IMG/VR virus record: IMGVR_UViG_3300031576_000001
Coordinates: 1-64,000 of that record
Length of the DNA: 64,000 nt
Reading direction: 5' to 3' (one strand)
In this document: positions 3,809 through 52,831 of the stretch, one piece after another
Numbering within the stretch: the first letter of the stretch is position 1
Layout: every line of letters begins with the position of its first letter
Made by a program: the position numbers and the translations under genes
Notes under the pieces: model-generated
Told to the model about the DNA's origin: nothing
The model's database searches: none
Seen by the model: only the letters and a program-made list of their open reading frames with translations

Positions 3809-4386
3809 CCCAAACCCCCAAGGGTGATGATGCCCCGCGAGGCGAGAACGCTGAGCACCGCGTAAATGGCGGACTCTGCCACGGTGCCTTCATTGCAAGG
3901 CACCCGGACCTCCAGGGAATTGCTGAGCATCACGCTCACAGAAGAACGTGAGCCGGGCAGCCCGCCCACCACAACCCCGCACAAGGGCACCCCCAGCGCC
4001 GCCGCGACCACCCCGCGCCACCCCTCCTCCGGGGTCACGTCCACTACCCAGTCGTGGGTCGGAATCAATCCACTGTTGCTGCCACCTTGACCTTCGCACC
4101 AAGAGGGGACGGGTGCTTTCGGACCCGTAATCTCTAGTAGCCCCGTGTACTCCATGACCCCCAGCGTGGCGAGCAGAAGCAAGCCCTCGGGGCTACGCGC
4201 CCTTGTACGCGACGAGAACTGCCCGCCCGACCGCGGGTTCATCCCGATGGCAACGGACTCCAACACGCCCCCTTCTAGCGCGGCCTGGCGGTAGCTCGCG
4301 ATGGTGGGGGCGAACCGCTGGACCACGGAGAGGTAGGTGGGGTCGGGCTCGGGGGCAGGGGACTCGGTAGCTGAGGGCGTTGTCAT
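3805..4386 (-). CDS. Hypothetical protein, paralog family member 1
   Basis: Contains VVAAALGVPLCGVVVGG...VLSVLASRGII. Start moved to ATG 4386 because GGTGTA lies 11 nt upstream. Confidence 0.7.
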   Translation of the reverse strand: MTTPSATESPAPEPDPTYLSVVQRFAPTIASYRQAALEGGVLESVAIGMNPRSGGQFSSRTRARSPEGLLLLATLGVMEYTGLLEITGPKAPVPSWCEGQGGSNSGLIPTHDWVVDVTPEEGWRGVVAAALGVPLCGVVVGGLPGSRSSVSVMLSNSLEVRVPCNEGTVAESAIYAVLSVLASRGIITLGGLG

Positions 4387-4935
4387 AGACCCCACTGTAC
4401 ACCACCCCCTCGCTTCTCGCCAAACACGCCTTGCGCAACTGGCACAGAGGGTGTACAACCCCCGAGCCGGTTGTGTTTCATCCGGTACGCCCCCGCTAAT
4501 CACGGGGTCACCGTGCTCCCCCAGGCTAGTCCTGGGAACCCCCTCTCGGTCTGTCGGGGGTAGGCTCTTTGACAAGATGGGTAAGCTAAGCTCGGCGGCA
4601 GAAGCCCCTGCCAGTCTCTACCAAGAGGCTGGGGCAGGGCTAACCGATGGGTCTACGGGGGACTTCGACCCCCGGTGACCTACGCCGAGAATCCAGCCCT
4701 CCACGCACCTCCCCGTGCTCTACGCCTTCGGGCACCTAGAGCTACGGGGTTGAAACGTAGCCTCTCAGGAGAGGCTACTGGCATCACGGTGGAGGTCTCC
4801 CCGGTCAGCACAGGGTTGCAGTTGGCACAACCGCTGCAAGTGCTTCGATCCGGGGTCTAGGAAGTCAGGGAAGGTACGGTGTAGGACGCATACTACACTT
4901 ACCTACACCCTCCATATCACCTCCTCGGTTTCGTA

Positions 4936-5293
4936 GGGGGGTAGGGGGGTTAACCTTAAACGGTCTGTACTAACAGTACAGACCTAATTTCCTAGAGGAT
5001 CTCTCTTCATAGAAACACAAACCCTTGTGTTTCTAAGTCTGAAGAGGATCTTAGAGCCCCAAACACTAAAGAAAACAGCAATGATAACGCAAATAGTCCA
5101 ACAATAAGTCCAAATAGTCCAGCAAAAGATACAGAAACAGAAACAAATACCGCAAATAGTCCAACAGAAACCGCAAATACAGCAAGTCCAAGTAGTTCAG
5201 CAAACCGTTCAAGTACCTCAGCAAGTGCAAACGCAGATACAGACGATACGAGCGATGATAGTAGAGCGAGTAAAGTTAACCCCCCTACCCCCC
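4936..5293. repeat. 19-bp perfect inverted repeat (GGGGGGTAGGGGGGTTAAC / GTTAACCCCCCTACCCCCC) enclosing an A-rich tract with CAAATAGTCCA repeats; candidate replication origin
   Basis: Arms at 4936-4954 and 5275-5293, internal hairpins, strong strand bias, located between divergent gene blocks. Confidence 0.6.
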
Positions 5294-5664
5294 ACGGTCA
5301 AAAAACACCCAGGGTCACTTGAGACCCACCCGGAGTAGGCTACGCCCTCTAGGTAAGAAGATACTCCCCCTACCCCCTCTTAGGTAAGAAGATACCCAGA
5401 GGAGGTTCTCAGAGAAAAACTGAGAAAAGCCCTTGCAAGTATCTCTTAGTTGAAGTAGAGAAGTACCGACAATTGCAGACTCCTTCTAAGTGAGAGATCA
5501 CCACGGGGCCGATCTGCGTCTAAAATACGGAAACCACGGAGAGAGACCGTGGAAAAGCGGGTCAGAGAGAGACTGACCACAAGTTAAAGCCCCAGTAAAC
5601 CCCCATATAAGGCTCCTACACGCTGTCTCACTAGAGAAGACGGGGCACAAGCTCGGATGGGGAA

Positions 5665-5701
5665 GCCAGCAGCGAAATTGATGCCTTCGGGCGTTGAGCA
5701 C
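5665..5701 (+). CRISPR. Solitary CRISPR repeat-like unit (I-B/Myxan-like)
   Basis: TGATGCCTTCGGGCGTTGAGCAC matches the repeat core at 52796-52831; flanked by near-identical ~20-nt direct repeats (5660-5680 and 5702-5721). Confidence 0.6.
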
Positions 5702-6352
5702 GGGAAGCCTCAGCGAAATTGCAGTAAAGAAGCACAGCAGCAAGGCAGAGAGAGACTGCCGTAGAAAAGCTCGAAAAGAGCACCCAGACCTCAGAGCGAG
5801 ACTGAGGACCAGCGAAGCTACTACAGAGCACACCTACCTACCTCTTAGGTGGAGGGCTCAAACACGTCTTGGAGCGAGACCAAGAAGCCAAAGCAGTAAA
5901 GGTTATCGCGGACTACCCTCTAAGCCGACCCCACTATGGGGGTCCACCGTGGGTAGGAGTACTCTCAAGTGTTCTCAGGTAAGAGTGTAAGCCTTGCCCT
6001 GAGAGTGCGAGAGAAAGACGGGATAGTAGTGTGAAGAGAGGGCTTCGCCCTCTAAGTAGAGAAGACTCCCCTGGTCAGGTGGAAATGTGGTCTAGTGTCA
6101 TCTACACTCTAGGTGAAGATGGCGAAACTAGACGCATGGTTCTACGCGATTCTCCTGGCGGTATTTCTGGCTTGGAGGGTCAAGGAGCACCTGAGACGGT
6201 AGTATTGCCTTCATGTGGGGTGGTAGCGCACTTCTGGTTATTCAGGGTGACATTGCCCTATCAAAGTGATTGAATTTCTTGCCAAGCTACGAAGAAGCGT
6301 GCAAGGTGGCGCACAGTCGATCTGGATCAGGGGTTCGACTGAGGAGGCGCAC

Positions 6353-7192
6353 ATGGCGAAGCAGTTGCGGGAGACGGCGATACCTAAAAACGACACGGAG
6401 CTAGTCAAGCTCTACGGGGAGGCTCTGGCATGTTTTGTGGGGCGCCTGGACAAGGGGCGCAAAGGGGGTGATGATCTTCTTCAGCACGTCTACCTCCAGG
6501 TCGTTCACCAGAAGGTGCTGGAGAAGTACCGGGCGAAGATCGCCTCTTTGCAAGAGGTGGTGACGATCCGCCGGTTCAAGCAAGAGATCACGGGGGCTGA
6601 GGCGGCAGCCTACCTGGGGGTCAAGTTCGTGGTCCTGCGGATCTGCTTCTGGCGTAGGGTCAACGGTGACCGTAGGTTCAAGAAGGGCGTCCCCCAGAGC
6701 TTCAAGGATGGGGTCAACGGCGTGCTCCCCATTGAGGAGTTCTGGCGCCAGCCCCCCCGGTGGATTCCTCCCCCTCTTCGCGGTATGCCCTGCTCCCCCA
6801 AGGCGGTCTACCGCACGGCAGACGTACTCACCTTCGACTCCCTCAAACCCTTTCGCACCCAAACCGACCGCGCCCCCCTCCCCGAAGAAGTCGTGACCGA
6901 CGTGAACGTGTCCCCCGAAGGTAAAGTGACCATGAGTTTCTGGTCCTACCTGGCGCGCGCCGTGCATAACATCTTCGCTAACTGGTGCCGGACGGCGTAC
7001 CGTAAGAACAAGGAGCGTTTTCTGGGGGAGTCGTGGGAGGAGACGTTCACGGGGGACGATGAGACCTTCTCTTGGTCGGAGCGGTTGTCGGACCCGTTCT
7101 CAGTTTCCCGAATTGAGGCTGGGGTGGAGCTACGCCAGGCGGGCCTTGAGGCGGTCAACGACGCAGCCAAGCGTGTCTTATCCCGCGTGTAG
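6353..7192 (+). CDS. ECF-sigma region-2-like protein with a large internal insertion
   Basis: LVKLYGEALACFV...DDLLQHVYL (regions 2.1-2.2) and SFWSYLARAVHNIFANWCR (2.3-2.4); RBS GAGGAGG before ATG 6353. Confidence 0.55.
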   Translation: MAKQLRETAIPKNDTELVKLYGEALACFVGRLDKGRKGGDDLLQHVYLQVVHQKVLEKYRAKIASLQEVVTIRRFKQEITGAEAAAYLGVKFVVLRICFWRRVNGDRRFKKGVPQSFKDGVNGVLPIEEFWRQPPRWIPPPLRGMPCSPKAVYRTADVLTFDSLKPFRTQTDRAPLPEEVVTDVNVSPEGKVTMSFWSYLARAVHNIFANWCRTAYRKNKERFLGESWEETFTGDDETFSWSERLSDPFSVSRIEAGVELRQAGLEAVNDAAKRVLSRV

Positions 7193-8685: not shown

Positions 8686-11600
8686 ATGCTGGTTCTCGAC
8701 GACACACGGGCGAAGGTCTATCAGGGCGACAGTGAGTTTGAGCTAGGAGAGCTAGCCAGCGAGTCTATAGACAGCATGGTGACCGACCCTCCCGCGGGAA
8801 TCGCTTTCATGCACGGTAAGACTTCCGGCTGGGATGCTCCCTCTACGTGGAAGTACCCTATCACCAGCCACGGCTTCAAGGATGACCCTGGTAAGTTCAG
8901 AAACCCGGCACCCTCGATAGGGCAGAGCACTCGAAACCCGGTGTGCCAGGTCTGTCACAAGCACAAGCGGGGTAAGAAGCGCTGTCAGTGTGAAGAGCCG
9001 GAGTTTGACGAGCGCGAACACGCCCGAAGCGACCGTGACATATTTATTGCCAAGATGACGGCAATCTTCAAGGAGTGCCTTCGAGTGCTCAAGCCAGGGG
9101 GTCACGCTGCGGTCTGGGCTATCCCTCGTACTGCACACTGGACCGCCATGGCGCTAGAGGAGGCGGGCTTTGAGGTGCGCGACTGTATATCGCACCTCAA
9201 AGACAACTCAGCCGAGCTAGCTAGCTTCTTTGAATCACTCTCGCCCTCTCAGCGTGAAATGTGGATGCGCGCCGAGCCTACCAACGGCTTGATGCTACAC
9301 GTCAACGGGAGCGGGTTTCCCAAGGGAAGAAATATCAGTAAAGAGATTGACGCGCAGTACGGGCGCATTCGATCCTCCGTGAAGCAAGTCAAGCAATCCC
9401 TGCGTGAGAAGTTTGACGCCAGTGGGAAGACCCGTACACAGATTGACAAGGAGTGCGGGTTTCGAGCCAGTAATTACCTCTCCGTAGAAGACGACACCAA
9501 GAGGGATGACCCTTGGTTTAACGTACTGCCCTCTCCTGAAAAATGGCTTGTCCTAAAAAAAGTGCTCGGGCTAGAGGACGAGACAGTCAGTGCCCAGCTA
9601 GACCAGTGGTTCAAGCAAGCCGAGCGTGAGCTTGTGGGTTGGAAAAAGACCGGTCCAGGGATACCCTTCTCTACAGCGGGTGGGCCTACGGAGCTACCTA
9701 TTACAGAGAGTCAGACGCCAGAAGGTAAGCAGTGGAAAGGGTGGAACGTAGCACTCAAGCCCTCTGTAGAGCACTGGCTACTCGTCCGTAAGCCTCTTTG
9801 TGAGGGTACCATTGTGGCTCAGGTTCTTGCCACCGGGACGGGGGCTCTCAACATTGACGCTTGCCGTGTCAAGGGTGGTGCGGGCTACGAAGAGGAAGTA
9901 GCCAAGAACATGGCTTCCTTCAAGAAGCTACATGAGAAGACTCCGGGCTGGAAAAACTCATCTGAGTTTGCCCCTGACGTGGACGGAGCCATGCTGGGTA
10001 GGTGGCCGTCTAACCTCCTCCTCAGTCACACGCAGAGGGTCATGTGTCAGCCCCGCCCTGACCTCTCCGCTGACGTGAAGGCTACGCTGTGGGCTTACTT
10101 TGAGTCGGAGCCCACCGAGGAGCTAGAGGTACGCCAGGAGGCAATCCCTCTTGGGTGGCGCCAGCTTTTCCTCCCTGTGCGTATCGAGGGTTGTAAGCAC
10201 GTAGGGACCAAGATTGTCCGTGCCCCGGTCATCAACCGGTTCGTGGACGGCATGAGGCCCTTCGGTGAGGGTGCGGGTCACAAGTACACTCAGACCGGGG
10301 GTGGTGTAGAGTCCCAAGCTGTTACAGACTGCAAACCCCCCTGCCCCGTGCCCGTGCTGGACAACCAAAGCGGTGACCGTAAGTCTCACGACACGGCTGA
10401 CACGGGTGGTTTTCGAGAGTCTATGCGAGACCCTTCCTGGCTAAAGAGTGGTACCCAACCCTCTTTGCCTCCCGGTCGGGGTGACACGGGCGGGGCTAGT
10501 CGGTTCTTTCCTGTGCTCTGTGCCCCTGAAACTCTAGACAACCAAAGCGGTGAGACCCGTAGTGCTTACCCTGGTAACCCCCAAGTGGCTTCAGCCTACA
10601 ACGCCAGGGACAAGTCAGACCAGAAGTCCCCCAAAGATGTCATCTTTGGGGGTAAAACCCCGGGGAAGGTCTACGGGGACACAGGGAGCGTCTCTCGGTA
10701 CTTCCCTGTCTTCTCTTGCGCGGCTGGCAGCCTGGATGACCAAAGCGGGGAGCGTCGTGGGGGTGGACCTGTTTACACAGCCAACCAAGGTAAGGGTTAC
10801 TGGGCAGGGGGTATGACTGGCGTGGCTACGCCTTTTAGCAGAGAGGCTGACGATGGGGGCGCCTCAAGGTTCTTTCCCACGTTTACTTGCGCGCCCGACA
10901 CCTTGGACAAGCAAACTGGGGAGAGAACCTCGACCCTCACCGGTAAAGCTGACCCCTCTCGCGCCCACACCAACCCAGGTCAAACGTCCAAGGAGTACCT
11001 CTGGGGTAACATCGGTCACGAAGCCTCAACCCATGTTTACGCTGACTCTGGTGGGGGCTCCCGGTTCTTCCCCACGTTTAGCCCGGATTGCGCTTTGCAT
11101 ATCCTCGATATGCAAAGCGGTGACCTCACACCCCACGCGCACAGAGAGGGTTACACTCCGAGGCTGGACACTGGCGTGTACAACCCTGGGCGCAAGGGTT
11201 CTCAAAGCGTGTGGGGTGGGGTTGCCCGGGGGGGCGCCTCTCAGTTTTACCCGTCATTTAGTCCCGAGTGTGCTTTGGAGGTTCAGAACCTCCAAAGCGG
11301 TGACTTGCGCGGAAACACTGGTGGTTCCGGGGGGGTAAGCTCAATCTTTGGTGGGCTCGACGCTTCAAAGACAACCTACAAGGCTTACGGCGACCACGGG
11401 GGTGCTGCTAGGTTCTTCCCCTCCTTTGAGCCCGAGTGCGTCCCGAGTCTCATTGATGCACAGAGCGGGGAGACGGTCTCTTCGCCTCGTACCGGTGACG
11501 ACGCGGGCACCGCCATGGATAAGACCCGTGAGGGCTGGCGGTTCAAGCGAGCTAACGGGGGGTTCTCCGACTCAGGGGGTGGCTCACGGTTCTTCCCCTC

Positions 11601-12114
11601 CTTTGAGCCCGATTGTCCTCTGAACGTCAATGACGTTCAGAGCGGGGTGTCTGTGTCTAGGGCGGGTGGCGTCGCAGGTGGTGAAATCTTCGGTAGTGCC
11701 ACAGGGTTTGTACCACGGAAGGGTCAGAATGACTCTGGTGGGGGGGGTCGCTTCTTCCCCTCGTTTGAGCCTGACCCTACCTTGCCTCCCTTCTACTACA
11801 CGCCCAAGGCGTCTACCGCGGATCGCATCTTGCCTGACGGGTCGAAATCACCTCACCCAACGGTCAAATCGCACGCCCTCATGTCGTGGCTCATCAAATT
11901 GGTCACACCGCCGGGTGGGGTAGTTCTTGACCCCTTCTCAGGTTCCGGGTCCACGCTAGTCTCGGCTGTCAAGCTGGGCTTTCGAGCCGTGGGTATAGAG
12001 CAGGACGAGACCTACATTGGGGTCATCCGTCAACGCCTGGCGGCAGCGCTGGCAGAGAGCACCGACAATGTAGCCAGTCGTGCTGCAATGGACCTAATGC
12101 ACGACATCGAGTGA
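8686..12114 (+). CDS. Beta-class N4/N6 DNA methyltransferase with 8 tandem variable cassettes
   Basis: N-terminal VTDPPAG (motif IV variant) and LRVLKPGG; C-terminal HPTVK...VLDPFSGSGST...GIEQD (motif I); eight LDxQSG...GGxSRFFP repeats. Confidence 0.9.
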   Translation: MLVLDDTRAKVYQGDSEFELGELASESIDSMVTDPPAGIAFMHGKTSGWDAPSTWKYPITSHGFKDDPGKFRNPAPSIGQSTRNPVCQVCHKHKRGKKRCQCEEPEFDEREHARSDRDIFIAKMTAIFKECLRVLKPGGHAAVWAIPRTAHWTAMALEEAGFEVRDCISHLKDNSAELASFFESLSPSQREMWMRAEPTNGLMLHVNGSGFPKGRNISKEIDAQYGRIRSSVKQVKQSLREKFDASGKTRTQIDKECGFRASNYLSVEDDTKRDDPWFNVLPSPEKWLVLKKVLGLEDETVSAQLDQWFKQAERELVGWKKTGPGIPFSTAGGPTELPITESQTPEGKQWKGWNVALKPSVEHWLLVRKPLCEGTIVAQVLATGTGALNIDACRVKGGAGYEEEVAKNMASFKKLHEKTPGWKNSSEFAPDVDGAMLGRWPSNLLLSHTQRVMCQPRPDLSADVKATLWAYFESEPTEELEVRQEAIPLGWRQLFLPVRIEGCKHVGTKIVRAPVINRFVDGMRPFGEGAGHKYTQTGGGVESQAVTDCKPPCPVPVLDNQSGDRKSHDTADTGGFRESMRDPSWLKSGTQPSLPPGRGDTGGASRFFPVLCAPETLDNQSGETRSAYPGNPQVASAYNARDKSDQKSPKDVIFGGKTPGKVYGDTGSVSRYFPVFSCAAGSLDDQSGERRGGGPVYTANQGKGYWAGGMTGVATPFSREADDGGASRFFPTFTCAPDTLDKQTGERTSTLTGKADPSRAHTNPGQTSKEYLWGNIGHEASTHVYADSGGGSRFFPTFSPDCALHILDMQSGDLTPHAHREGYTPRLDTGVYNPGRKGSQSVWGGVARGGASQFYPSFSPECALEVQNLQSGDLRGNTGGSGGVSSIFGGLDASKTTYKAYGDHGGAARFFPSFEPECVPSLIDAQSGETVSSPRTGDDAGTAMDKTREGWRFKRANGGFSDSGGGSRFFPSFEPDCPLNVNDVQSGVSVSRAGGVAGGEIFGSATGFVPRKGQNDSGGGGRFFPSFEPDPTLPPFYYTPKASTADRILPDGSKSPHPTVKSHALMSWLIKLVTPPGGVVLDPFSGSGSTLVSAVKLGFRAVGIEQDETYIGVIRQRLAAALAESTDNVASRAAMDLMHDIE
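10351..11775 (+). repeat. Eight coding tandem repeats (about 55-67 aa each) with conserved borders and variable cores
   Basis: Units start LDNQSG, LDNQSG, LDDQSG, LDKQTG, LDMQSG, QNLQSG, IDAQSG, NDVQSG and end in (D)xGxx(S/A/G)(R/Q)(F/Y)(F/Y)P. Confidence 0.9.
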
Positions 12115-22255: not shown

Positions 22256-22335
22256 CTAGCTCACGTAGCTGGTGCTACAGGCGGTCTGTAAAACCGCTGT
22301 CCATGACATGCGGGGTTCGATTCCCCGGGGCTAGG
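22256..22335 (+). tRNA. tRNA-Tyr(GTA)
   Basis: GCGGT-CTGTAAA-ACCGC; variable arm present. Confidence 0.8.
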
Positions 22336-22339
22336 CTGA

Positions 22340-22412
22340 CAAGCTGTAGGCGCAAGGAGTGCTACCAGCATGGAATGCTGGGGGTGTGTAGGTCATATCT
22401 ACACCGGCTTGT
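22340..22412 (+). tRNA. Atypical tRNA, anticodon GGA (Ser?), short variable arm
   Basis: CCAGC-ATGGAAT-GCTGG; degenerate T loop. Confidence 0.5.
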
Positions 22413-22415
22413 CAA

Positions 22416-22515
22416 TCGAGGAAGCCACAGGCGTGGCCTTTGGGGGTGATACCCTGAAGCGGGGTGTGCAGTGTGCATAACTGGGCACCAGCGGGTCCGA
22501 TTCCCACTCCTCGGG
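22416..22515 (+). ncRNA. Atypical tRNA-like RNA with a long extra arm
   Basis: CGAGGA/TCCTCG acceptor; GGG-TCCGATT-CCC T arm. Confidence 0.45.
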
Positions 22516-22555
22516 CTTGTACCGTGCTCACCGGGGCTATACGGTGAGGTTTTAT

Positions 22556-22628
22556 CCGCGCAAATCCTTGGTGGTCTAGGTACCTGTCTGATATACAGGC
22601 GATGGGAGTTCGACTCTTCCTGCGCGGA
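22556..22628 (+). tRNA. tRNA-Ile(GAT)
   Basis: CCTGT-CTGATAT-ACAGG. Confidence 0.8.
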
Positions 22629-22630
22629 CT

Positions 22631-22703
22631 GTGGCCGGTGGTTGCATGGTGCGACCGTCTAACTGTGAATTAGACTTCAGAGGGTTCGATTCCCTTCGGT
22701 CAC
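22631..22703 (+). tRNA. tRNA-His(GTG)
   Basis: TCTAA-CTGTGAA-TTAGA. Confidence 0.8.
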
Positions 22704-22929
22704 TCTGGCGTGCCTAGGGCACGTCTTACGCTTTCCGTTCCGGCTTGAAAGTCTTGGGCTGCGCGCGTACACCCAAGAGGAGTAGAGAGAGGGAGACTCT
22801 AACCAGATTGATCCTCTGGTGTACATCTGAAAAGAGGGGAGACCTGTGTGCGAGTCACAGGGAGGGCACTAGTCGAGAGCAGTGTTGAATGGTTCAGCGA
22901 GGGAGAGGATGCCCGACTGCCCGACGAAT

Positions 22930-23001
22930 TCCGAGGTTGTCAACGGTAGGGCGACCACACTGTTACTGTGGTGTTTGCAGGTCCGACTCCTGCCCTCGGA
23001 G
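22930..23001 (+). tRNA. tRNA-Asn(GTT)
   Basis: CCACA-CTGTTAC-TGTGG. Confidence 0.75.
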
Positions 23002-23303
23002 CCCGGTACGCGGAAGGGGTAAGCGATGCCTCTTCGTGCGTGCCTGAGATTACGTGCTCTAGTTCAACGCTAGAACAACGTCACTGGCTCGTCGTGGGCC
23101 GGCGTGTAGATGCAACGCACGGTGTGCTCCGCGCTAGCCTTTGGTTAGTTGCACAGACTACCCTTTGGTTTGACACCCAAAGGTGGCCCGTCTTGGACAA
23201 GACAGGGGTATCTCACCCCTCGGAGTCCCATGAGGATGACGAAATCAGAACCGGCGGAGGCTGTGTTTACACGGTCGAAGAAACCGGGGACGGAGAGAAC
23301 TAT

Positions 23304-23376
23304 GCCACCCAAGCACATCTGGTGATTGCAGTCCCCTGAAGAGGGAAACGGCCCGGTTCGATCCCGGGGGGTGGCA
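23304..23376 (+). tRNA. tRNA-Phe(GAA)
   Basis: TCCC-CTGAAGA-GGGA. Confidence 0.8.
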
Positions 23377-23449
23377 CTACGGGCGACAAGACTTGTGGTT
23401 CGAGTCCACACTGATTCTTCTGAGAGACGAAGGGTCGGGTAACGGATAA

Positions 23450-23523
23450 CAGCGTGAAGTCTTATGGCGAGACGCCAGTTCGGGGAACTGGAGATCGGAG
23501 GTTCAATTCCTCTCACGCTGACC
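23450..23523 (+). tRNA. tRNA-Pro(GGG)
   Basis: CCAGT-TCGGGGA-ACTGG. Confidence 0.75.
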
Positions 23524-23597
23524 GCGGAAGAGTGGCACGGTTCCATAGCTGGCTCATACCCAGAATACATTCAGTTCAACTCTGATTTCCGCCACCA
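23523..23597 (+). tRNA. tRNA-Met(CAT)
   Basis: CTGG-CTCATAC-CCAG; encoded CCA end. Confidence 0.75.
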
Positions 23598-23607
23598 GTG
23601 AAGACAT

Positions 23608-23684
23608 TGCGGCGTGGAGCAGCCTGGAAGCTCGCAAGGCTCATAACCTTGAGGTCGTCGGTTCAAATCCGACCGCTCGCGACA
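23608..23684 (+). tRNA. tRNA-fMet-like (CAT)
   Basis: GTGGAGCAGCCTGGAAGCTCG...CTCATAA...GGTCGTCGGTTCAAATCCG is close to bacterial initiator tRNA. Confidence 0.85.
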
Positions 23685-23685
23685 A

Positions 23686-23790
23686 AGAGTGTAGTCAAAG
23701 AAGAGGGTTACTTCCTCTAGTAAGAGAAACCTGACGGTTCGATTCCGTCCCGGCGTGGTCGCCATACACTCTCTTCGTTCATCTCACTCT
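23686..23790 (+). ncRNA. YrlA-like Y RNA with an internal T arm
   Basis: AGAGTG-T-AG-TCA..GAAGAGGGTTACTTC..GACGG-TTCGATT-CCGTC..CTCTCTTC..CT-CACTCT. Confidence 0.8.
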
Positions 23791-23793
23791 CTA

Positions 23794-23867
23794 TCCTCGG
23801 TAGCTCAAGTGAAGAGCACCTCCTGTTTACAGGGGTTGATGCTAGGTTCGATGCCTAGCCCTTGGGC
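23794..23867 (+). ncRNA. tRNA-like RNA with an expanded anticodon arm (CTG-TTTA-CAG)
   Basis: Canonical D and T arms; imperfect acceptor stem. Confidence 0.55.
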
Positions 23868-23917
23868 AATCCGTGATGGGGCAACTCGGGCAACAGGGTA
23901 CCCAGCACGGTCGTATT

Positions 23918-23986
23918 GTGCAAGAGTCAAGGCGACAACGTGGTTTCCAAATCCACGGAAGGTGGGTTCGATTCCTCCCTTGCACG
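23918..23986 (+). tRNA. tRNA-Trp(CCA)
   Basis: CGTGG(T)-TTCCAAA-(T)CCACG. Confidence 0.65.
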
Positions 23987-23988
23987 CT

Positions 23989-24088
23989 AGGTGTAGTCAA
24001 GCCCAGAGGTTCATCATACAATAGATGCTGGCTCCCTTGCGAGAGCCAGCACCCCGTACCAAACCACCTCTTGGTAACAATCTCACCT
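23989..24088 (+). ncRNA. Y-RNA-like RNA
   Basis: AGGTG-T-AG-TCA..AGAGGTTCATC..internal hairpin..ACCTCT..CT-CACCT. Confidence 0.7.
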
Positions 24089-24093
24089 TTTCT

Positions 24094-24113
24094 GGCGTCG
24101 TGGCTCAGTGGTT
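24094..24113 (+). pseudogene. 5' fragment of a tRNA disrupted by the HNH insertion
   Basis: GGCGTCGTGGCTCAGTGGTT ends at the HNH promoter. Confidence 0.55.
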
Positions 24114-24134
24114 GGGCCGGTGTATGCACATCTT

Positions 24135-24500
24135 ATGGCTGAATCAGAGCTTGTGACTTGTTGTGGTAAGACAATACAAAAGAGGCACCTCAAGACGCAC
24201 TTGAGGCTCAAGCACAAAGACTTCTCTCTCATACGTAGGGACTCAACACGGAGAGAGCGCCTTATTGTTGAGAGGGGGCATCGTTGTCAGGTGTGTGGCA
24301 TGTCTGAATGGATGGGCGTCAACATACCCATTGAGCTTGACCATACTGATGGCAATTGTGAAAACAATACGAGGGAGAACTTGAGGCTAATATGCCCCAA
24401 TTGCCATGCCCAAACTCCGACCTATCGGGGTAAGAATATGGGTAAAAGTGGGCATACCAAGCGAGCGACTATACTGAAGAAGTATGGTAGTTATCGTTGA
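24135..24500 (+). CDS. HNH homing endonuclease
   Basis: CQVC...ELDHTDGNCENNTRENLRLICPNCHAQT; lower GC; GGTGTA 10 nt upstream. Confidence 0.9.
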   Translation: MAESELVTCCGKTIQKRHLKTHLRLKHKDFSLIRRDSTRRERLIVERGHRCQVCGMSEWMGVNIPIELDHTDGNCENNTRENLRLICPNCHAQTPTYRGKNMGKSGHTKRATILKKYGSYR

Positions 24501-24503
24501 TTC

Positions 24504-24574
24504 GGTGCCGTAGCTTGAAGGTCAAGCCAGGAGCTTTTAACTCTTAGTTGAGGGTTCGATTCCCTCCGGCGCCA
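24504..24574 (+). tRNA. tRNA-Lys(TTT)
   Basis: AGGAG-CTTTTAA-CTCTT. Confidence 0.8.
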
Positions 24575-24632
24575 CGAGGCTCGGGATACTTTTTGCAGCC
24601 TGCAATAGTGTTCACAACCTGAGCCTTACTAG

Positions 24633-24706
24633 GGGAGTCTAGTTGGTCTGGTGACCGCGCTTGCTTCATAAGCAAGTTTAGAAGGGTTCGATCCCCTTGG
24701 CTCCTA
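24633..24706 (+). tRNA. tRNA-Met/Ile2(CAT)
   Basis: CTTGC-TTCATAA-GCAAG. Confidence 0.7.
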
Positions 24707-24834
24707 CGAGCTGAACCTGCGAGGGTCCGGCTAATTTGCCCTGGCGACGGGGTAGGGGTTGCCCCGAGAGTGTCTTGGTACACAACGGCGGCGTTGATGG
24801 TTCAGCCTCAGACTCGACCCATGGGGCATTACAA

Positions 24835-24905
24835 GGGGTTATCGTCCAAAGGCAGGACGGCAGATTTGCATTCTGCAAATTTCGGTTCGAGTCCGAATTA
24901 CTCCA
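24835..24905 (+). tRNA. tRNA-Cys(GCA)
   Basis: GCAGA-TTTGCAT-TCTGC arm. The loop can also be read with TGC central, so the anticodon call is tentative. Confidence 0.6.
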
Positions 24906-24913
24906 CGACAGAT

Positions 24914-24986
24914 CAGGGAGAAGCCCTATGGTGGGGCGCCAGTTTCGGGAACTGGAACTTCGCGAGTTCAATTCTCGCCTCCCTGA
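24914..24986 (+). tRNA. tRNA-Pro(CGG)
   Basis: CCAGT-TTCGGGA-ACTGG. Confidence 0.8.
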
Positions 24987-25063
24987 CTATGGGTGCGTCT
25001 CTTAGGACGCCAGGGTCGCCTGGTACCTTGACACACCCGTTACGTGACTTACCGTCACGTTTC

Positions 25064-25153
25064 GCCCTGGTAGCTCAACTACGAGAGCGCCCCTGTAGTG
25101 TCCCCAGGGACCAACAGGGGAGGTTGGAGGTGCAAATCCTTCCCCGGGCCCCA
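25064..25153 (+). ncRNA. tRNA-like RNA whose anticodon arm is replaced by a long hairpin; CCA end
   Basis: CCCCTGT..GTCCC-CA-GGGAC..ACAGGGG lies between normal D and T arms. Confidence 0.65.
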
Positions 25154-25158
25154 TGTTT

Positions 25159-25233
25159 GCCAACGTAGCCCAACTAGGTAGAGGCAACTGCCCGAGGCGC
25201 AGTACAGTGAGAGTCCGAATCTCTTCGTTGGTA
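25159..25233 (+). tRNA. tRNA-Leu(GAG), short variable arm
   Basis: ACTGC-CCGAGGC-GCAGT. Confidence 0.7.
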
Positions 25234-25243
25234 CTTGATAAAG

Positions 25244-25314
25244 CGTGCTGTTTCCCTTGGAGGGTGGGCGGTCTTCTAAACCGCTACGTGTGTGTTCAAT
25301 TCTCACCAGCACGA
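25244..25314 (+). tRNA. tRNA-Arg(TCT)
   Basis: GCGGT-CTTCTAA-ACCGC. Confidence 0.7.
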
Positions 25315-25317
25315 CAA

Positions 25318-25389
25318 TGCGTGGGCGTCCCGGGGACAACAGAGGCTTTGACCCTCTGGAAAAAGGTTCGACTCCTTTCTCGCGTACCA
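25318..25389 (+). tRNA. tRNA-Gln(TTG)
   Basis: AGAGG-CTTTGAC-CCTCT; CCA end. Confidence 0.75.
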
Positions 25390-25452
25390 AGGTGTAGTCA
25401 CTCAGAGGGTTACTTCGGCAAGAACAGGCACCCTCTAAACTCTATCTCACCT
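25390..25452 (+). ncRNA. Minimal Y-RNA-like RNA
   Basis: AGGTG-T-AG-TCA..AGAGGGTTACTTC-GGCAA-GAA..ACCCTCT..CT-CACCT. Confidence 0.75.
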
Positions 25453-25458
25453 TCCAAT

Positions 25459-25529
25459 GGAACCGTAGCTCTAAGGCAGAGCACGACGCTCTTAACGTCA
25501 GGGTCAGGGTTCGATTCCCTGTGGTTCCA
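25459..25529 (+). tRNA. tRNA-Lys(CTT)
   Basis: GACG-CTCTTAA-CGTC. Confidence 0.8.
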
Positions 25530-25612
25530 CGATAGGAGCAGTCACTTGAGTAGGCAGGTGAGAGCAGACGTGCTTAGGGTCGCCAGACGCAACCCTCTGT
25601 TTTTGCTTACAA

Positions 25613-25688
25613 CGCGCAAACGTCTCTGGTGGGGCAAACAGCCTGACGTGCTGTTCTTGGACGGGTTCGATTCCCTCTTGCGTGACCA
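25613..25688 (+). tRNA. tRNA-Val(GAC)
   Basis: ACAGC-CTGACGT-GCTGT; CCA end. Confidence 0.7.
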
Positions 25689-25724
25689 GCGTAAAGCCCT
25701 ATGGTGGGGCGCTTGCTTTGGGTA
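25687..25724 (+). pseudogene. 5' half of tRNA-Pro(TGG) truncated at the anticodon loop by the HNH insertion
   Basis: CAGCGTAAAGCCCTATGGTGGGGCGCTTGCTTTGGGT has the same D arm as tRNA-Pro(CGG) at 24914. Confidence 0.7.
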
Positions 25725-25761
25725 CGTGGCACGCTCCTGTGCGTTCAGTCATACTAACTGC

Positions 25762-26208
25762 GTGAGTACCAGCAAGTGCTTCAAGTGTAAGTTGACCCTA
25801 CCTACAAGCGAGTTTTCCATTCGCCCCAACGGGAAGCCTACGAGCTACTGTAAAACTTGCCAACGGAGTGCATCTAAAGCCCACTACCAAGCAAACAAGA
25901 CAGCGCACAATCAACGGCGTTGGGCAAGTATTATAAAGTATCGTGATAACGTGACTTCTCACGTTATAAAGATCAAAGAAGGTAGTCCGTGTGTGGACTG
26001 CCACGAGTACCACCCGTACTGGGCTATGGACTTTGACCACCGCGACCCCGCAAACAAAGAGTTCTGTATAGGGCAAGCGGTAAACTTTGGCTACTCACTT
26101 AGTCGTGTGGACGCAGAGATCGCAAAGTGCGACCTTGTTTGCGCGCTGTGCCACAGGTACAGAACTTACGGTCAGCGCAGAAACTTCCGGGTTGTAGCCA
26201 AAAGGTGA
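25762..26208 (+). CDS. HNH-family homing endonuclease
   Basis: CFKC..CKTC zinc finger; CVDC...MDFDHRDP..K...EIAKCDLVCALCHR. Confidence 0.85.
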   Translation: MSTSKCFKCKLTLPTSEFSIRPNGKPTSYCKTCQRSASKAHYQANKTAHNQRRWASIIKYRDNVTSHVIKIKEGSPCVDCHEYHPYWAMDFDHRDPANKEFCIGQAVNFGYSLSRVDAEIAKCDLVCALCHRYRTYGQRRNFRVVAKR

Positions 26209-26259
26209 GGCACCTGTTTTGGGAACAGGTTAATGGCAGTTCGAGTCTGCTCAACCCGA
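26188..26259 (+). tRNA. tRNA-Pro(TGG)
   Basis: CCTGT-TTTGGGA-ACAGG; overlaps the HNH stop codon. Confidence 0.8.
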
Positions 26260-26271
26260 CTTACTATAGTA

Positions 26272-26335
26272 CAGCGTGTGCTCATGGTTACGGGAGTACA
26301 GGAACCAGGGGGTCCGATTCCCTCTACGCTGACCA
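26272..26335 (+). ncRNA. 64-nt truncated tRNA-like RNA (acceptor and T arm, CCA end, single middle hairpin)
   Basis: CAGCGTG/TACGCTG-ACCA; GGGGG-TCCGATT-CCCTC. Confidence 0.55.
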
Positions 26336-26447
26336 GGGTGCCTTTGCTAGTGGAGTGACCTCCCCCAACTCCAACCTCTGCTAGTGACTGCGCGCCCTAT
26401 TCTATACACATTAGGCTGGAACCCATCATTTCAGTCTAATGAGCTAA

Positions 26448-26520
26448 CCCGTTGAAGTCCTCTGGTGGGGACACCACATTGTCAATGTGGCCTTGGCGAG
26501 TTCAATTCTCGTCAGCGGGA
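26448..26520 (+). tRNA. tRNA-Asp(GTC)
   Basis: CCACA-TTGTCAA-TGTGG. Confidence 0.75.
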
Positions 26521-26676
26521 CTACCTGTACCCAACAGTCTCTTCCTACACGCTACTCTACTTCCTGGTTCGATTCCAGGGCACTGCACCTCACGGACAGC
26601 AGAGCTAGCCTAACGGTAAAGGCATTCGTTTTACCAACGGACACTCAACGGAGAGGCAACTCGGGCACGGTAACAT

Positions 26677-26756
26677 GCAGACGTGGTGTAACGGTAGCCA
26701 CGGTGGTCTTAGAAGCCACTGCCTAAAGCGTAGGGGTTCGACTCCCCTCGTCTGCA
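26677..26756 (+). tRNA. tRNA-Leu(TAG)
   Basis: GTGGT-CTTAGAA-GCCAC; variable arm present. Confidence 0.85.
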
Positions 26757-26781
26757 CAAGCCATCGGTGTAAGGTATTCAC

Positions 26782-27210
26782 ATGCAAGCTCTAGCGCTCA
26801 TCGTTTCCGTAGTGGCAGCCTTGGTTGTCATGGCGTTCGTTTCTGAGTCGGGTTCGAGGCTCCGCACGTTTAGTTTGGGGTGCCTCATGGCTCTCGGGGG
26901 CGTTCTCTTCTACGCCCTGCTCACGGTGTACCCCTTCATGGTGGGGTGGAACTGGCTCATGCCGGGGGTCTTTGGGTTGAAGACTCTGGACTTCTGGCAA
27001 GCCTTGGTGCTCATCCTCCTGGCGGGTGTGTTGTTCCACTCTGGGGCTGTTAGCACCAAGAGCGACTTAGGGTTTGTTAGACACAACCCCCTCTTTGCAA
27101 AGAGGGAACACGCTAACGTATTCCAACGGCAGAGAAAGCGGCCTCAGATACCGCAAAGTGTGGGTTCGAGTCCCACCGTTAGCACTGTGAGTCTGTTGGA
27201 AGACTACTAG
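26782..27210 (+). CDS. Small membrane protein
   Basis: Three hydrophobic segments; WNWLMPGVFGLKTLDFWQAL; GGTGTA 10 nt upstream; 3' end runs over a tRNA. Confidence 0.65.
   Translation: MQALALIVSVVAALVVMAFVSESGSRLRTFSLGCLMALGGVLFYALLTVYPFMVGWNWLMPGVFGLKTLDFWQALVLILLAGVLFHSGAVSTKSDLGFVRHNPLFAKREHANVFQRQRKRPQIPQSVGSSPTVSTVSLLEDY
27112..27184 (+). tRNA. tRNA-Leu(CAG), short variable arm
   Basis: GCGG(C)-CTCAGAT-(A)CCGC. Confidence 0.75.
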
Positions 27211-27302
27211 AAAGCAAGACCATTTGGGGGCGTGTATCCCGCATGCTCCCCCCCTCAGATCAAAACCAAAGCAAGGTGGTCCCCGGATAGAGTTTTCCTT
27301 CT

Positions 27303-27378
27303 GCTCCCGTCGTCTAAAGGTAGGTACACTGGGTTCTCAACCCAGAAATGGCGAGTTCAATTCTCCCCGGGAGTACCA
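27303..27378 (+). tRNA. tRNA-Glu(CTC)
   Basis: CTGGG-TTCTCAA-CCCAG; CCA end. Confidence 0.85.
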
Positions 27379-27388
27379 CACACAACTT

Positions 27389-27463
27389 GTCTCCGATGCT
27401 CAATGGAAGGGCGCGTGTCTACGGAACACGTATTTGAGAGTTCGAGTCTCTCCGGGGATGCCA
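27389..27463 (+). tRNA. tRNA-Arg(ACG)
   Basis: CGTGT-CTACGGA-ACACG; CCA end. Confidence 0.85.
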
Positions 27464-27470
27464 GACACAA

Positions 27471-27542
27471 GCCCTTACGGTGCGATGGACGCACACGACC
27501 CTCCGAAGGTCGTCCGTGTCGGTTCGATTCCGACTAGGGGCT
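27471..27542 (+). tRNA. tRNA-Arg(CCG)
   Basis: CGACC-CTCCGAA-GGTCG. Confidence 0.8.
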
Positions 27543-27588
27543 CTCTGCGGTGTATGTCAGCATTGGTTGGCAATACTCTTTCAGTCTT

Positions 27589-27675
27589 GGAACTTGACGG
27601 CTCAATGGTGAGGCCACTAGTCTTGAAAACTAGCTACACCCGAGAGGGTGAGGGGTTCGATTCCTCCTGGTTCCT
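27589..27675 (+). tRNA. tRNA-Ser(TGA)
   Basis: CTAGT-CTTGAAA-ACTAG; long variable arm. Confidence 0.85.
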
Positions 27676-27684
27676 CTGTGTGTT

Positions 27685-27770
27685 GGAAGGCAGAGCCTCA
27701 TGGTGAGGCGCGAGCGTGCTAAGCTCGGTCTAGTCCTCTTGGGACTGTGGTTCGATTCCACTACCTTCCG
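27685..27770 (+). tRNA. tRNA-Ser(GCT)
   Basis: CGAGC-GTGCTAA-GCTCG; long variable arm. Confidence 0.8.
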
Positions 27771-27773
27771 CAA

Positions 27774-27857
27774 GTGCGTAGTCACGAGAGACGGTTACTT
27801 CAACAAAACTGGTGAAATTACCCCCGCAAGGGGGACCGTAGCTCAACAATCTCGCAT
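27774..27857 (+). ncRNA. Y-RNA-like RNA
   Basis: GTGCG-T-AG-TCA..GACGGTTACTTC..GAA..CCCC-GCAA-GGGG..ACCGT..CT-CGCAT. Confidence 0.75.
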
Positions 27858-27865
27858 GATTCTAC

Positions 27866-27941
27866 GCTAGCGTAGCCCAACTAGGCAGAGGCAGCGCACT
27901 CAAAACGCGCAAAGGTGAGGGTCCGAGTCCCTCGGCTAGCA
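27866..27941 (+). tRNA. tRNA-Leu(CAA), short variable arm
   Basis: GCGC(A)-CTCAAAA-(C)GCGC. Confidence 0.75.
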
Positions 27942-27989
27942 CTCAAGACCACAGAGAGGGTGTCTTGTAGACGTACTCGCTCTGGTTTA

Positions 27990-28061
27990 GCTCCCATCGA
28001 CTACTGGCTAGGTTATCGGTTTTTCACACCGAGGGACGGAGATCGATACTCCGTGGGAGCA
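27990..28061 (+). tRNA. tRNA-Glu(TTC)
   Basis: TCGGT-TTTTCAC-ACCGA. Confidence 0.8.
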
Positions 28062-28066
28062 CTTTT

Positions 28067-28139
28067 GCCACGCTAGTCCTCTGGGGAGGGCGCTTGCTTT
28101 ACACGCAAGATTAGCAGGGTTCGATCCCCTGGCGTGGTA
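28067..28139 (+). tRNA. tRNA-Val(TAC)
   Basis: CTTGC-TTTACAC-GCAAG. Confidence 0.8.
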
Positions 28140-28182
28140 CCGAGAGGGGGGCACGGTGTTCCTGTGTAACTCTCTCGACTCT

Positions 28183-28255
28183 GGGTTCTGAGCCGCAAAG
28201 TGTGGCAGTGTGACTGTTAATCCACCGAAGCTGGGCGCGATTCCCAGAGAGCCCT
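28183..28255 (+). tRNA. tRNA-Asn(GTT), divergent
   Basis: Anticodon loop CTGTTAA; GGGTTCT/AGAGCCC acceptor. Confidence 0.6.
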
Positions 28256-28264
28256 CTGGTTACT

Positions 28265-28359
28265 GGTCCTTAAGTTGTACCCCCCTTGGTAACCCAAGCG
28301 TGGGGAGGGGACGCTTGCTGTAGTAGGCAAGGCAGGTTCGACCCCTGCGGGACCAACCA
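28265..28359 (+). ncRNA. Atypical tRNA-like RNA with an elongated D region; CCA end
   Basis: TGGTCCT/GGGACCA-ACCA; GCAGG-TTCGACC-CCTGC. Confidence 0.55.
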
Positions 28360-52723: not shown

Positions 52724-52831
52724 GTGTACCCCTCTGTGTAAGCCTTCGGGCGTTGAGCACACGCCAAGGGTCAGCAGATCGCCGTGGCCTGGGACGTGAT
52801 CTCGACAGTGATGCCTTCGGGCGTTGAGCAG
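52724..52831 (+). CRISPR. Mini CRISPR array: 2 repeats (37 and 36 nt) and 1 spacer (35 nt); no cas genes in the window
   Basis: R1 GTGTACCCCTCTGTGTAAGCCTTCGGGCGTTGAGCAC; spacer 52761-52795; R2 GTGATCTCGACAGTGATGCCTTCGGGCGTTGAGCAG. Confidence 0.75.

What the first reader, a model, noticed from the sequence alone, without database searches (positions are those of the whole stretch)
5660..5721. Solitary CRISPR repeat framed by a ~20-nt duplication: candidate RNA anti-CRISPR (Racr)
Seen: TGATGCCTTCGGGCGTTGAGCAC (5679-5701) matches the mini-array repeat core 47 kb away. It occurs once in the large non-coding region, between GGGAAGCCAGCAGCGAAATTG and GGGAAGCCTCAGCGAAATTG. Established: solitary repeat units in phages can act as crRNA mimics that sequester Cas6/Cas7. 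Inference: the phage may both inhibit and exploit the same host I-B system; the duplication may be an insertion scar.
Basis: partly seen in the sequence, partly recalled or inferred. Interest (0 to 1): 0.7.

Follow-up and report, generated by a model that had tools for sequence, protein, structure and literature searches.

The report
Phage-borne solitary CRISPR repeat mimic
A very large phage from a cave metagenome carries lone copies of the conserved hairpin-plus-handle part of a type I-B CRISPR repeat, most likely as RNA mimics that engage host Cas proteins, and the one studied here sits next to a PAM-flanked partial copy of its own would-be guide.

Summary
The 23 nt at 5679-5701 are an exact copy of the conserved 3' module (short hairpin plus 8-nt handle) of a 36-nt CRISPR repeat. 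That repeat forms true arrays beside type I-B (Cas8b, Cas7, Cas5, Cas4-Cas1, Cas2, Cmx6-type Cas6) operons in Gemmataceae, Myxococcota and Acidobacteria.

The window is the first 64 kb of a 322,633-bp phage record with no Cas6 or Cas7 homologue. The module occurs in:
- the solitary unit studied here;
- a repeat-spacer-repeat mini-array at 52.7 kb;
- a second solitary unit at 184,001 of the record;
- a degenerate inverted unit at 4715-4736.

All point the same way as the genes downstream.

The flanking duplication is real. Two unrelated viral contigs show the same arrangement around solitary repeats of this family. The upstream copy is preceded by ATG, which other data support as this family's PAM.

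My best reading is an RNA mimic of the Racr/crRNA-like class, cut by host Cas6. Its guide-like 3' product partly matches a PAM-flanked site at its own 5' border. Expression, Cas6 binding and inhibition are untested: no RNA run was listed and no relatives were found. I rate it a new variant of a known kind, of moderate interest.

The parts
5679..5701 (+). Solitary repeat module (SRU1): hairpin GATGCC-TTCG-GGCGTT at 5680-5695 plus the handle-equivalent TTGAGCAC at 5694-5701
   Evidence: Exact 23-nt match to the mini-array repeats and to host array repeats. The hairpin is kept in the centroid fold of the 500-nt context. Weak Rfam CRISPR-DR33 hit at 5668-5701 (18.1 bits, gathering score 39).
5660..5680 (+). 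Upstream copy X of the flanking duplication; abuts the module and is preceded by ATG at 5657-5659
   Evidence: It is the only one of 27 GGGAAGCC sites in the record that is preceded by ATG.
5702..5721 (+). Downstream copy X'. It starts directly after the repeat end, where a crRNA guide would start
4715..4736 (-). Degenerate inverted repeat-like unit (other tetraloop, two substitutions), co-oriented with the leftward genes. Its first 6 downstream bases resemble X'
   Evidence: (inverted pair I2).
52724..52760 (+). Mini-array repeat 1: degenerate 5' part and a weakened stem
52761..52795 (+). Mini-array spacer, 35 nt; target unknown
   Evidence: No protospacer was found in IMG/VR or metagenome contigs.
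52796..52831 (+). Mini-array repeat 2, full 36 nt starting GTGA. It is 33/36 identical to a Polyangiaceae MAG repeat (L012) and 30/36 to Gemmata repeats
4576..6352 (.). Divergent non-coding region that holds SRU1. Genes run leftward on the - strand before it and rightward on the + strand after it. The + strand is A-rich, and cumulative GC skew is lowest here
5408..5885 (+). Cluster of six hairpins with variable 5-6 bp stems and a conserved purine loop (AGNGAGA or AGAAAAA) that surrounds SRU1. Starts: 5408, 5534, 5560, 5744, 5789, 5867
   Evidence: the five with the AGNGAGA loop occur on the + strand only and nowhere else in the 322 kb. The sixth, at 5408 (loop AGAAAAA), comes (family D4). Folded (z = -2.34).

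Best explanation
SRU1 is a phage-borne mimic of the functional core of a host type I-B (Myxan-type) CRISPR repeat, and it acts as RNA. I infer that it is transcribed on the + strand as part of the long structured leader of the rightward early operon. The host's Cmx6-type Cas6 would bind the GAUGCC-UUCG-GGCGUU hairpin and cut 8 nt before the repeat end. This gives two products: an upstream RNA ending in the Cas6-bound hairpin (the Racr-like part) and a downstream RNA that begins with a correct 5' handle followed by X' (a crRNA-like part). Both take Cas6, Cas7, Cas5 and Cas8b away from phage-targeting crRNAs. The second solitary unit, the inverted unit and the mini-array would add to this load. 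The crRNA-like product also has one PAM-flanked partial match in the phage: X, directly upstream of the unit (ATG, then 8 contiguous nt, then 11 more after a one-base bulge). That is too short for cleavage but is the layout of CRISPR-like regulatory RNAs. X is therefore either a Cascade docking site giving feedback on the unit's own transcript, or what is left of a protospacer trimmed until the match was harmless. Shown here: the identity with host repeats, the I-B cas context, solitariness, the hairpin, the duplication with its recurrence and the ATG, and co-orientation with genes. Inferred: transcription, Cas6 cleavage, Cascade loading and inhibition.
For: The 23 nt are an exact match to repeats of true arrays with a period of 70-73 nt, against a chance expectation of 0.00. 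In those arrays the 5' 14 nt differ widely between taxa, and the phage units keep only the shared 3' module. Host arrays lie beside Cas8b, Cas7, Cas5, Cas4-Cas1 and Cas2, and Cas6 PF09559 is found in 3 of 3 Gemmataceae genomes tested. The phage record has no Cas6 or Cas7 homologue, so any activity depends on host proteins. The flanks of the phage copies are unrelated to each other, so the module itself is what is conserved. All units point the same way as the downstream genes. The hairpin survives folding in its 500-nt context. Strand-specific motif clusters around SRU1 argue that the + strand acts as RNA. The [X][repeat][X'] layout recurs in viral contigs L150 (19 nt) and L181 (14 nt with 1 mismatch) with unrelated X sequences, and in none of the host units. 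ATG precedes X here and in L150. ATG also precedes three other partial matches: overlapping spacers in L069, an internal repeat within one spacer in L043, and the target of a mini-array resembling known host regulatory crRNA-like RNAs (CreR/CreA) in L071. ATG is the published PAM of type I-B1 systems (PMC9881144). Racr and Cracr mechanisms are established for other subtypes (PMC10651486; bioRxiv 10.1101/2024.10.29.618823).
Against: There is no evidence of transcription; no RNA run was listed. No sigma-70-like promoter lies in 4500-6400 and no phage promoter motif could be derived. The unit covers only 64% of the repeat, so it fails the published SRU criterion, and it scores below the Rfam gathering threshold. 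No relatives of the phage were found, so conservation or an empty site cannot be tested. No sampled host spacer matches the phage, so it is not shown that this phage is under attack by this system, and the host is unidentified. X and X' pair contiguously over only 8 nt, below the 9 PAM-proximal base pairs used to define Cracrs. The conserved core in the host comparison is partly set by the exact-match search pattern.
Confidence: 0.5

Rival explanations
1. Non-functional relic. The solitary units are decayed remains of mini-arrays, or scars of recombination between a phage protospacer and the matching spacer in a host array. X / repeat / X' would then be what remains after the PAM-flanked copy was truncated to escape self-targeting. 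The unit has no present role.
For: Only the 3' 23 nt of the repeat are present. Mini-array repeat 1 is visibly decaying. The duplication abuts the repeat on both sides as an insertion or recombination product would, and the ATG is explained if X was once a protospacer chosen by host adaptation. A tandem repeat-plus-spacer duplication exists in a viral contig (L161). No promoter was found.
Against: Two solitary units are 23/23 identical although their flanks share nothing, and what they keep is exactly the hairpin plus handle. A neutral relic would not keep the core perfect while its flanks randomised. All four loci are co-oriented with the downstream genes. The recombination model needs an illegitimate join that falls exactly at the repeat border in L150.
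Confidence: 0.25
2. Cracr-type regulator aimed at the host. The RNA made from SRU1 (or from the mini-array or the second solitary unit) guides host Cascade to the promoter of the host cas operon or of a CRISPR-guarded toxin, and silences it.
For: This repeat family has host-encoded regulatory mini-arrays. Fimbriiglobus locus L071 carries a degenerate repeat / spacer / repeat unit whose first 11 guide nt match an ATG-flanked site 130 nt away. Viral Cracrs are documented, including for I-B. The handle part of the repeat, needed for Cascade loading but dispensable for RacrIF1 activity, is perfectly kept.
Against: No PAM-proximal match of 9 nt or more links any of the four phage guides to sampled host cas loci, including the regions upstream of cas6 in three Gemmataceae genomes. 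An 11-nt match of the second unit's guide lies inside the conserved cas1 coding sequence at chance level and without ATG. SRU1 has no second repeat.
Confidence: 0.1
3. DNA-level role. The repeat copies act as DNA, for example as decoy integration sites for the host Cas4-Cas1-Cas2 integrase (which could also have created the mini-array) or as short homology for recombination with host arrays.
For: The mini-array has the product structure expected from spacer integration at a phage-borne repeat. Earlier work suggested that SRUs might enable integration into CRISPR arrays (PMC10651486).
Against: The solitary units lack the 5' part of the repeat, so one repeat border that the integrase attacks during spacer insertion (my knowledge of Cas1-Cas2 integration, not tested here) is missing. 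The strict co-orientation with transcription is not needed for a DNA role. 23 nt is very short for homologous recombination.
Confidence: 0.07

Closest known systems
Racr / solitary repeat units (RacrIF1; Camara-Wilpert et al. 2023, PMC10651486)
   Same: A solitary, intergenic CRISPR-repeat mimic in a phage with no cas genes. It keeps the Cas6 hairpin, and the matching system is encoded by candidate hosts. I-B SRUs are listed in that paper's supplement.
   Different: Only 64% of the repeat is present. No promoter was detected. Several units plus a mini-array sit in one genome. The unit is flanked by a PAM-preceded partial copy of its own downstream sequence. It belongs to the Myxan-type I-B repeat family of Planctomycetota and Myxococcota. 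Nothing has been tested experimentally.
Cracr / viral crRNA-like regulatory RNAs (bioRxiv 10.1101/2024.10.29.618823) and host CreR/CreA
   Same: A repeat-derived RNA with a correct handle whose guide has only partial, PAM-proximal complementarity to a PAM-flanked DNA site. That is the design for binding without cleavage.
   Different: The only matched site is in the phage itself, directly upstream of the unit, not a host cas or creT promoter. There is one repeat rather than two degenerate repeats. The contiguous match is 8 nt, against at least 9 in the published definition.
Viral mini-CRISPR arrays (inter-viral conflict; cited in PMC10651486 and PMC11656645)
   Same: The unit at 52.7 kb is repeat / 35-nt spacer / repeat with host-type repeats and no cas genes.
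   Different: No target was found for the spacer. SRU1 itself has no second repeat.

Membership tests
Type I-B (Myxan-type) CRISPR repeat family | Sequence identity to repeats of true arrays next to I-B cas genes | tested here: met
   23/23 identity to the 3' module of repeats in arrays with a period of 70-73 nt. Cas8b, Cas7, Cas5, Cas4-Cas1 and Cas2 lie beside such arrays, and Cas6 PF09559 is on the same contigs.
Type I-B (Myxan-type) CRISPR repeat family | Full-length 36-nt repeat | tested here: not met
   The 5' 13-14 nt of SRU1 match no repeat better than chance (4-5 of 14). The Rfam CRISPR-DR33 score of 18.1 is below the gathering score of 39.
SRU / Racr | Solitary: no other repeat within 100 bp | tested here: met
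   No further copy with up to 6 mismatches lies near 5679-5701.
SRU / Racr | Intergenic position | tested here: met
   No family hits were found for the two local ORFs tested (4337-4678 and 6031-6273). Stop-free frames are no longer than in shuffles.
SRU / Racr | At least 90% identity over at least 90% of a known repeat (SRUFinder full match) | tested here: not met
   Identity is 100%, but only over 23 of 36 nt (64%) of the repeats in hand. Criteria taken from PMC10651486.
SRU / Racr | Promoter within 250 bp upstream; expressed as a small RNA | tested here: inconclusive
   No sigma-70-like site lies in 4500-6400. The host's promoter consensus is unknown, and no RNA run was listed.
SRU / Racr | Bound and cut by the cognate Cas6; forms aberrant Cas complexes; lowers interference | not testable with these tools
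   Needs biochemistry and infection or plasmid-interference assays.
SRU / Racr | Host encodes the matching CRISPR-Cas subtype | tested here: inconclusive
   Candidate host lineages do. The actual host is unidentified, and no sampled spacer hits the phage.
Cracr / crlRNA | Two (degenerate) repeats flanking a pseudo-spacer | tested here: not met
   SRU1 has one repeat module only. The 52.7-kb mini-array does have two.
Cracr / crlRNA | [quoted passage not shown] | tested here: not met
   No ATG-flanked anchored match was found in about 150 host and viral loci or upstream of cas6 in three Gemmataceae genomes. The true host was not sampled.
Cracr / crlRNA | Partial, PAM-flanked complementarity of the guide to a DNA site | tested here: met
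   X at 5660-5680 is preceded by ATG and matches X' over 8 + 11 nt. The ATG PAM is supported and PMC9881144.

The most novel reading that the evidence does not exclude
The [ATG-X][repeat][X'] layout, seen here and in two unrelated viral contigs, is a distinct one-repeat device. The phage RNA is cut by host Cas6, loads into host Cascade and brings it back to a partial target at its own 5' border. Host CRISPR activity is thereby turned into a repressor or sensor acting on the phage's own early leader: a self-limiting decoy, or a switch that reads out whether Cascade is present.
Probability: 0.15. Interest if true: 0.8.

Novelty: new variant of a known kind. Interest (0 to 1): 0.55.

Why it matters
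RNA anti-CRISPRs and viral crRNA-like regulators are recent discoveries, studied mostly in Proteobacteria and Firmicutes. This case would extend them to the Myxan-type I-B systems of Planctomycetota and Myxococcota and to a very large phage. It also suggests that a 23-nt hairpin-plus-handle module can stand in for the whole repeat. Such truncated mimics would be missed by current SRU finders, which demand near-full coverage. The recurring PAM-flanked self-match gives a concrete, testable hint that these RNAs really are loaded into Cascade. It also yields an ATG PAM prediction for this repeat family.

Tried and rejected
- **Chance match:** rejected.
- **Assembly artefact:** rejected; an independent Logan contig is identical.
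- **Hidden gene over the unit:** the 111-aa - strand frame and the 102-aa + strand frame are no longer than in shuffles.
- **Phage-encoded Cas6 or Cas7:** none found by family search or by tblastn with host ORFs. The record is only about 68% complete.
- **Relatives for an empty-site comparison:** none found by megablast against phage records, by an exact-core scan of IMG/VR, with three flanking proteins in IMG/VR, or with one protein against the 5.8-billion-protein set, which returned only itself.
- **Host spacers against the phage:** only chance-level partial hits among 1316 spacers.
- **Target of the mini-array spacer:** none in the phage, IMG/VR or metagenome contigs. The 28 metagenome hits other than the phage's own record match only the searched pattern, at most 29 of 35 nt.
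- **Protospacers for direct PAM inference among the loci in hand:** none.
- **Flanking duplications at the other three copies:** none.
- **Similarity of X to the sequence before a repeat in MAG contig L037:** that sequence is the 5' end of a cas6 gene. I judged the likeness borderline after multiple looks and did not use it.
- **Sigma-70-type promoters before L150 and L181:** my by-eye candidates fail the scan's threshold.
- **Promoter motif discovery across the phage:** gave only ribosome-binding-site-like words.
- **RNA evidence:** no run was listed.
- **Racr paper supplements:** neither this record nor the core sequence is in the text held, but one file is cut.

Full report
**What is in the sequence**

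The 23-mer reported at 5679-5701 is there. Within the window it recurs only in the two repeats at 52.7 kb, and none are expected by chance. The window is the first 64 kb of a 322,633-bp IMG/VR virus record, estimated about 68% complete. It carries 37 tRNA genes and a tmRNA hit, so this is a very large phage.

In the whole record the core occurs four times, all on the + strand:
- SRU1, the unit in the finding;
- the two mini-array repeats;
- a second exact solitary copy at 184001-184023.

A looser structural pattern adds a fifth, degenerate unit on the - strand at 4715-4736, with 0.002 expected by chance.

The flanking duplication is real. It aligns 8 + 11 nt around a one-base bulge, and only 4 of 3000 null window pairs score as high. 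It is specific to SRU1. An independent Logan assembly of the same cave-metagenome sample gives the identical sequence at both loci.

**It is a true CRISPR repeat derivative**

An exact scan of one genome per prokaryotic species found the 18-nt core in 109 stretches. Many are arrays with a period of 70-73 nt in several lineages:
- Gemmata, Fimbriiglobus and Zavarzinella;
- Kofleriaceae, Polyangiaceae and Sandaracinaceae;
- Acidobacteria and others.

The repeat is 36 nt. Given a match in the core, the 5' 14 nt differ widely between taxa across 36 distinct consensus repeats. The invariance of the core in that set is partly fixed by the search pattern.

Beside the arrays in Gemmata (L068) and Fimbriiglobus (L017) lie Cas8b (N- and C-terminal domains), Cas7 (DevR), Cas5, a Cas4-Cas1 fusion and Cas2. 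All three Gemmataceae genomes tested carry a PF09559 Cas6 on the array contig.

The array repeats point the same way as the cas genes. That fixes the RNA sense as ...GAUGCC-UUCG-GGCGUU-GAGCAC, a short hairpin followed by the part that becomes the 8-nt 5' handle.

**Anatomy of the phage copies**

The mini-array is repeat 1 (52724-52760, 5' part and stem degenerate), a 35-nt spacer (52761-52795) and repeat 2 (52796-52831). Repeat 2 is a full 36-nt repeat starting GTGA. It is 33/36 identical to a Polyangiaceae MAG repeat and 30/36 to Gemmata repeats. The mini-array lies between a sliding-clamp-like gene and an ATPase gene.

SRU1 and the unit at 184 kb keep only the 3' 23 nt. Their upstream 13-14 nt match no repeat better than chance, and the flanks of the four exact or near-exact + strand copies are unrelated to each other.

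Every unit points the same way as the genes downstream of it, including the inverted unit at 4715-4736, which faces the leftward operon. The unit at 184 kb follows a 55-codon gene and is followed by a 15-bp hairpin before the next gene.

The phage record has no Cas6 or Cas7 homologue. Any activity must therefore use host proteins.

**Surroundings of SRU1**

SRU1 lies in a non-coding stretch of about 1.75 kb, between leftward genes (ending at 4575) and rightward genes (first credible start near 6353). The stretch has a strongly A-rich + strand, and cumulative GC skew is lowest here. Open frames are no longer than composition predicts.

The region holds three sets of repeated elements, the first two confined to the + strand:
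- Six hairpins with variable stems and a conserved purine loop. The five with the AGNGAGA loop are found nowhere else in the 322 kb; the sixth, at 5408, has the loop AGAAAAA.
- Six to seven CTCT(T)A(A/G)G motifs, against 0.1-0.2 expected.
- 21-nt periodic units at 5084-5225.

Strand-specific, stem-covarying elements argue that the + strand works as RNA here. This is the best indirect support that SRU1 is transcribed in the sense orientation. In a 500-nt fold the SRU1 hairpin is kept in the centroid structure. No sigma-70-like promoter was detected, and no RNA run was listed.

**The duplication**

A scan of IMG/VR that allowed any tetraloop found 40 viral contigs with solitary or mini-array units of the same repeat family. 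I tested 101 solitary or mini units from host and viral loci. The test asked whether the sequence starting right after the repeat recurs within 80 nt upstream. Apart from one tandem duplication (L161), three units stood out, and all three are viral:
- L150: 19 nt, exact;
- L181: 14 nt, one mismatch;
- SRU1.

In L150 and L181 the upstream copy ends exactly where the full repeat starts. In SRU1 it ends where the 23-nt module starts. The three X sequences are unrelated.

The three bases before X are ATG here and in L150, and TTA in L181. ATG also precedes:
- the site matched by the first 11 guide nt of a mini-array in Fimbriiglobus (L071) that resembles known host regulatory crRNA-like RNAs (CreR/CreA);
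- a 16-nt overlap between two spacers of one array (L069);
- an 11-nt match inside a single spacer of the L043 array.

ATG is the published PAM of type I-B1 systems (PMC9881144). Of the 27 GGGAAGCC sites in the phage, only X is preceded by ATG.

So X looks like a PAM-flanked partial target, or a former protospacer, of the guide-like RNA that would start at X'. It does not look like a transposon-type target duplication.

**How it most likely works**

By analogy with RacrIF1, host Cas6 binds and cuts the hairpin, and the stem-loop is essential (PMC10651486). Unlike RacrIF1, the handle is perfectly kept in every copy. The downstream product should therefore also load Cas5, Cas8b and Cas7 like a crRNA.

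Both products compete with phage-targeting crRNAs. In the I-F system even a non-targeting crRNA lowered interference.

The self-match admits two readings:
- X is a docking site for Cascade loaded with the unit's own RNA. This would feed back on the leader transcript, following the logic of CreR/CreA and viral Cracrs.
- X is the trimmed remnant of a protospacer. A full-length PAM-flanked copy next to a unit producing the matching guide would be suicidal, so only copies shortened to 17-21 nt would survive.

Either reading implies that the RNA is, or once was, used by Cascade. None of these steps has been observed.

**Rivals**

- *Neutral relic.* It explains the truncation and the missing promoter. 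It does not explain two 23/23-identical cores in unrelated flanks, or the co-orientation with genes.
- *Host-directed Cracr.* It found no support in the sampled hosts. An 11-nt match of the 184-kb unit's guide lies in the conserved cas1 coding sequence at chance level and without ATG. The true host is unknown.
- *DNA-level roles.* These fit poorly with a unit that lacks one repeat border.

**Comparison and novelty**

SRUs, Racrs, Cracrs and viral mini-arrays are all known. I-B SRUs are listed in the Racr study, but this record and its core are not in the supplement text held, and one file is cut.

What differs here:
- the repeat family and the host phyla;
- the reduction to a 23-nt module, which fails the 90% coverage filter of the published finder;
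- several units plus a mini-array in one very large phage;
- the recurrent PAM-flanked self-match.

I rate it a new variant of a known kind, of moderate interest, with all functional claims still to be tested.

Noticed in passing
window 5408-5885 (+): Six hairpins with covarying 5-6 bp stems and a conserved purine loop, often followed by (A)AAGC. The five with the AGNGAGA loop lie on the + strand only and are unique in the 322-kb record; the sixth, at 5408, has the loop AGAAAAA. They resemble boxB-type protein-binding RNA hairpins.
   Followed up: partly
window 5346, 5377, 5443, 5842, 5917, 6049 (+): A CTCT(T)A(A/G)G motif is clustered 30- to 60-fold over expectation, on the + strand only. It resembles boxA (CGCTCTTA) of nut or rrn antitermination sites. 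Together with the hairpins this may be an antitermination leader.
   Followed up: partly
window 5084-5225: A/C-rich units with a 21-nt period (CAAATAGTCCA...), next to long palindromes at 4962-4984 and 5010-5035 and 31-nt inverted arms at 4936-4966 / 5263-5293. They sit where cumulative GC skew is lowest and gene orientation switches, so this may be a replication origin.
   Followed up: no
G000:C1:184001-184023 (locus L004 1497-1519): A second exact solitary repeat module lies directly after a 55-codon gene of unknown function (a possible anti-CRISPR-type small gene). A 15-bp hairpin follows about 60 nt further on. A HAD_SAK_2 (RNA-repair-type) gene is divergent upstream.
   Followed up: partly
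window 22256-31256: A block of 37 tRNA genes (ARAGORN) plus an Rfam tmRNA hit at 30256-30633, all on the + strand. This is typical of very large phages.
   Followed up: no
locus L071 (Fimbriiglobus MAG), - strand 5058-4933: A host mini-array with two degenerate repeats. The first 11 nt of its pseudo-spacer match an ATG-flanked site 130 nt upstream on the other strand, making it a candidate CreR/CreA-type regulatory RNA for this I-B family. The neighbouring large ORFs have no Pfam hits.
   Followed up: partly
locus L037 1534-1733 (Planctomycetota MAG): A cas6 (PF09559) reading frame stops after 59 codons exactly where a solitary repeat core begins. This is either a disrupted cas6 or a chimeric short contig.
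   Followed up: partly
loci L148, L162, L178, L182 and L161, L169/L170 (IMG/VR contigs): Other viral contigs carry two or three units of the same repeat family with near-identical 'spacers', some holding their own hairpin. They look like tandem crRNA-like units rather than adaptive arrays.
   Followed up: no
window 8686-12114 (+): A 1142-aa protein with a C-terminal N6/N4 DNA methylase domain lies early in the rightward operon. It may be an anti-restriction function.
   Followed up: no
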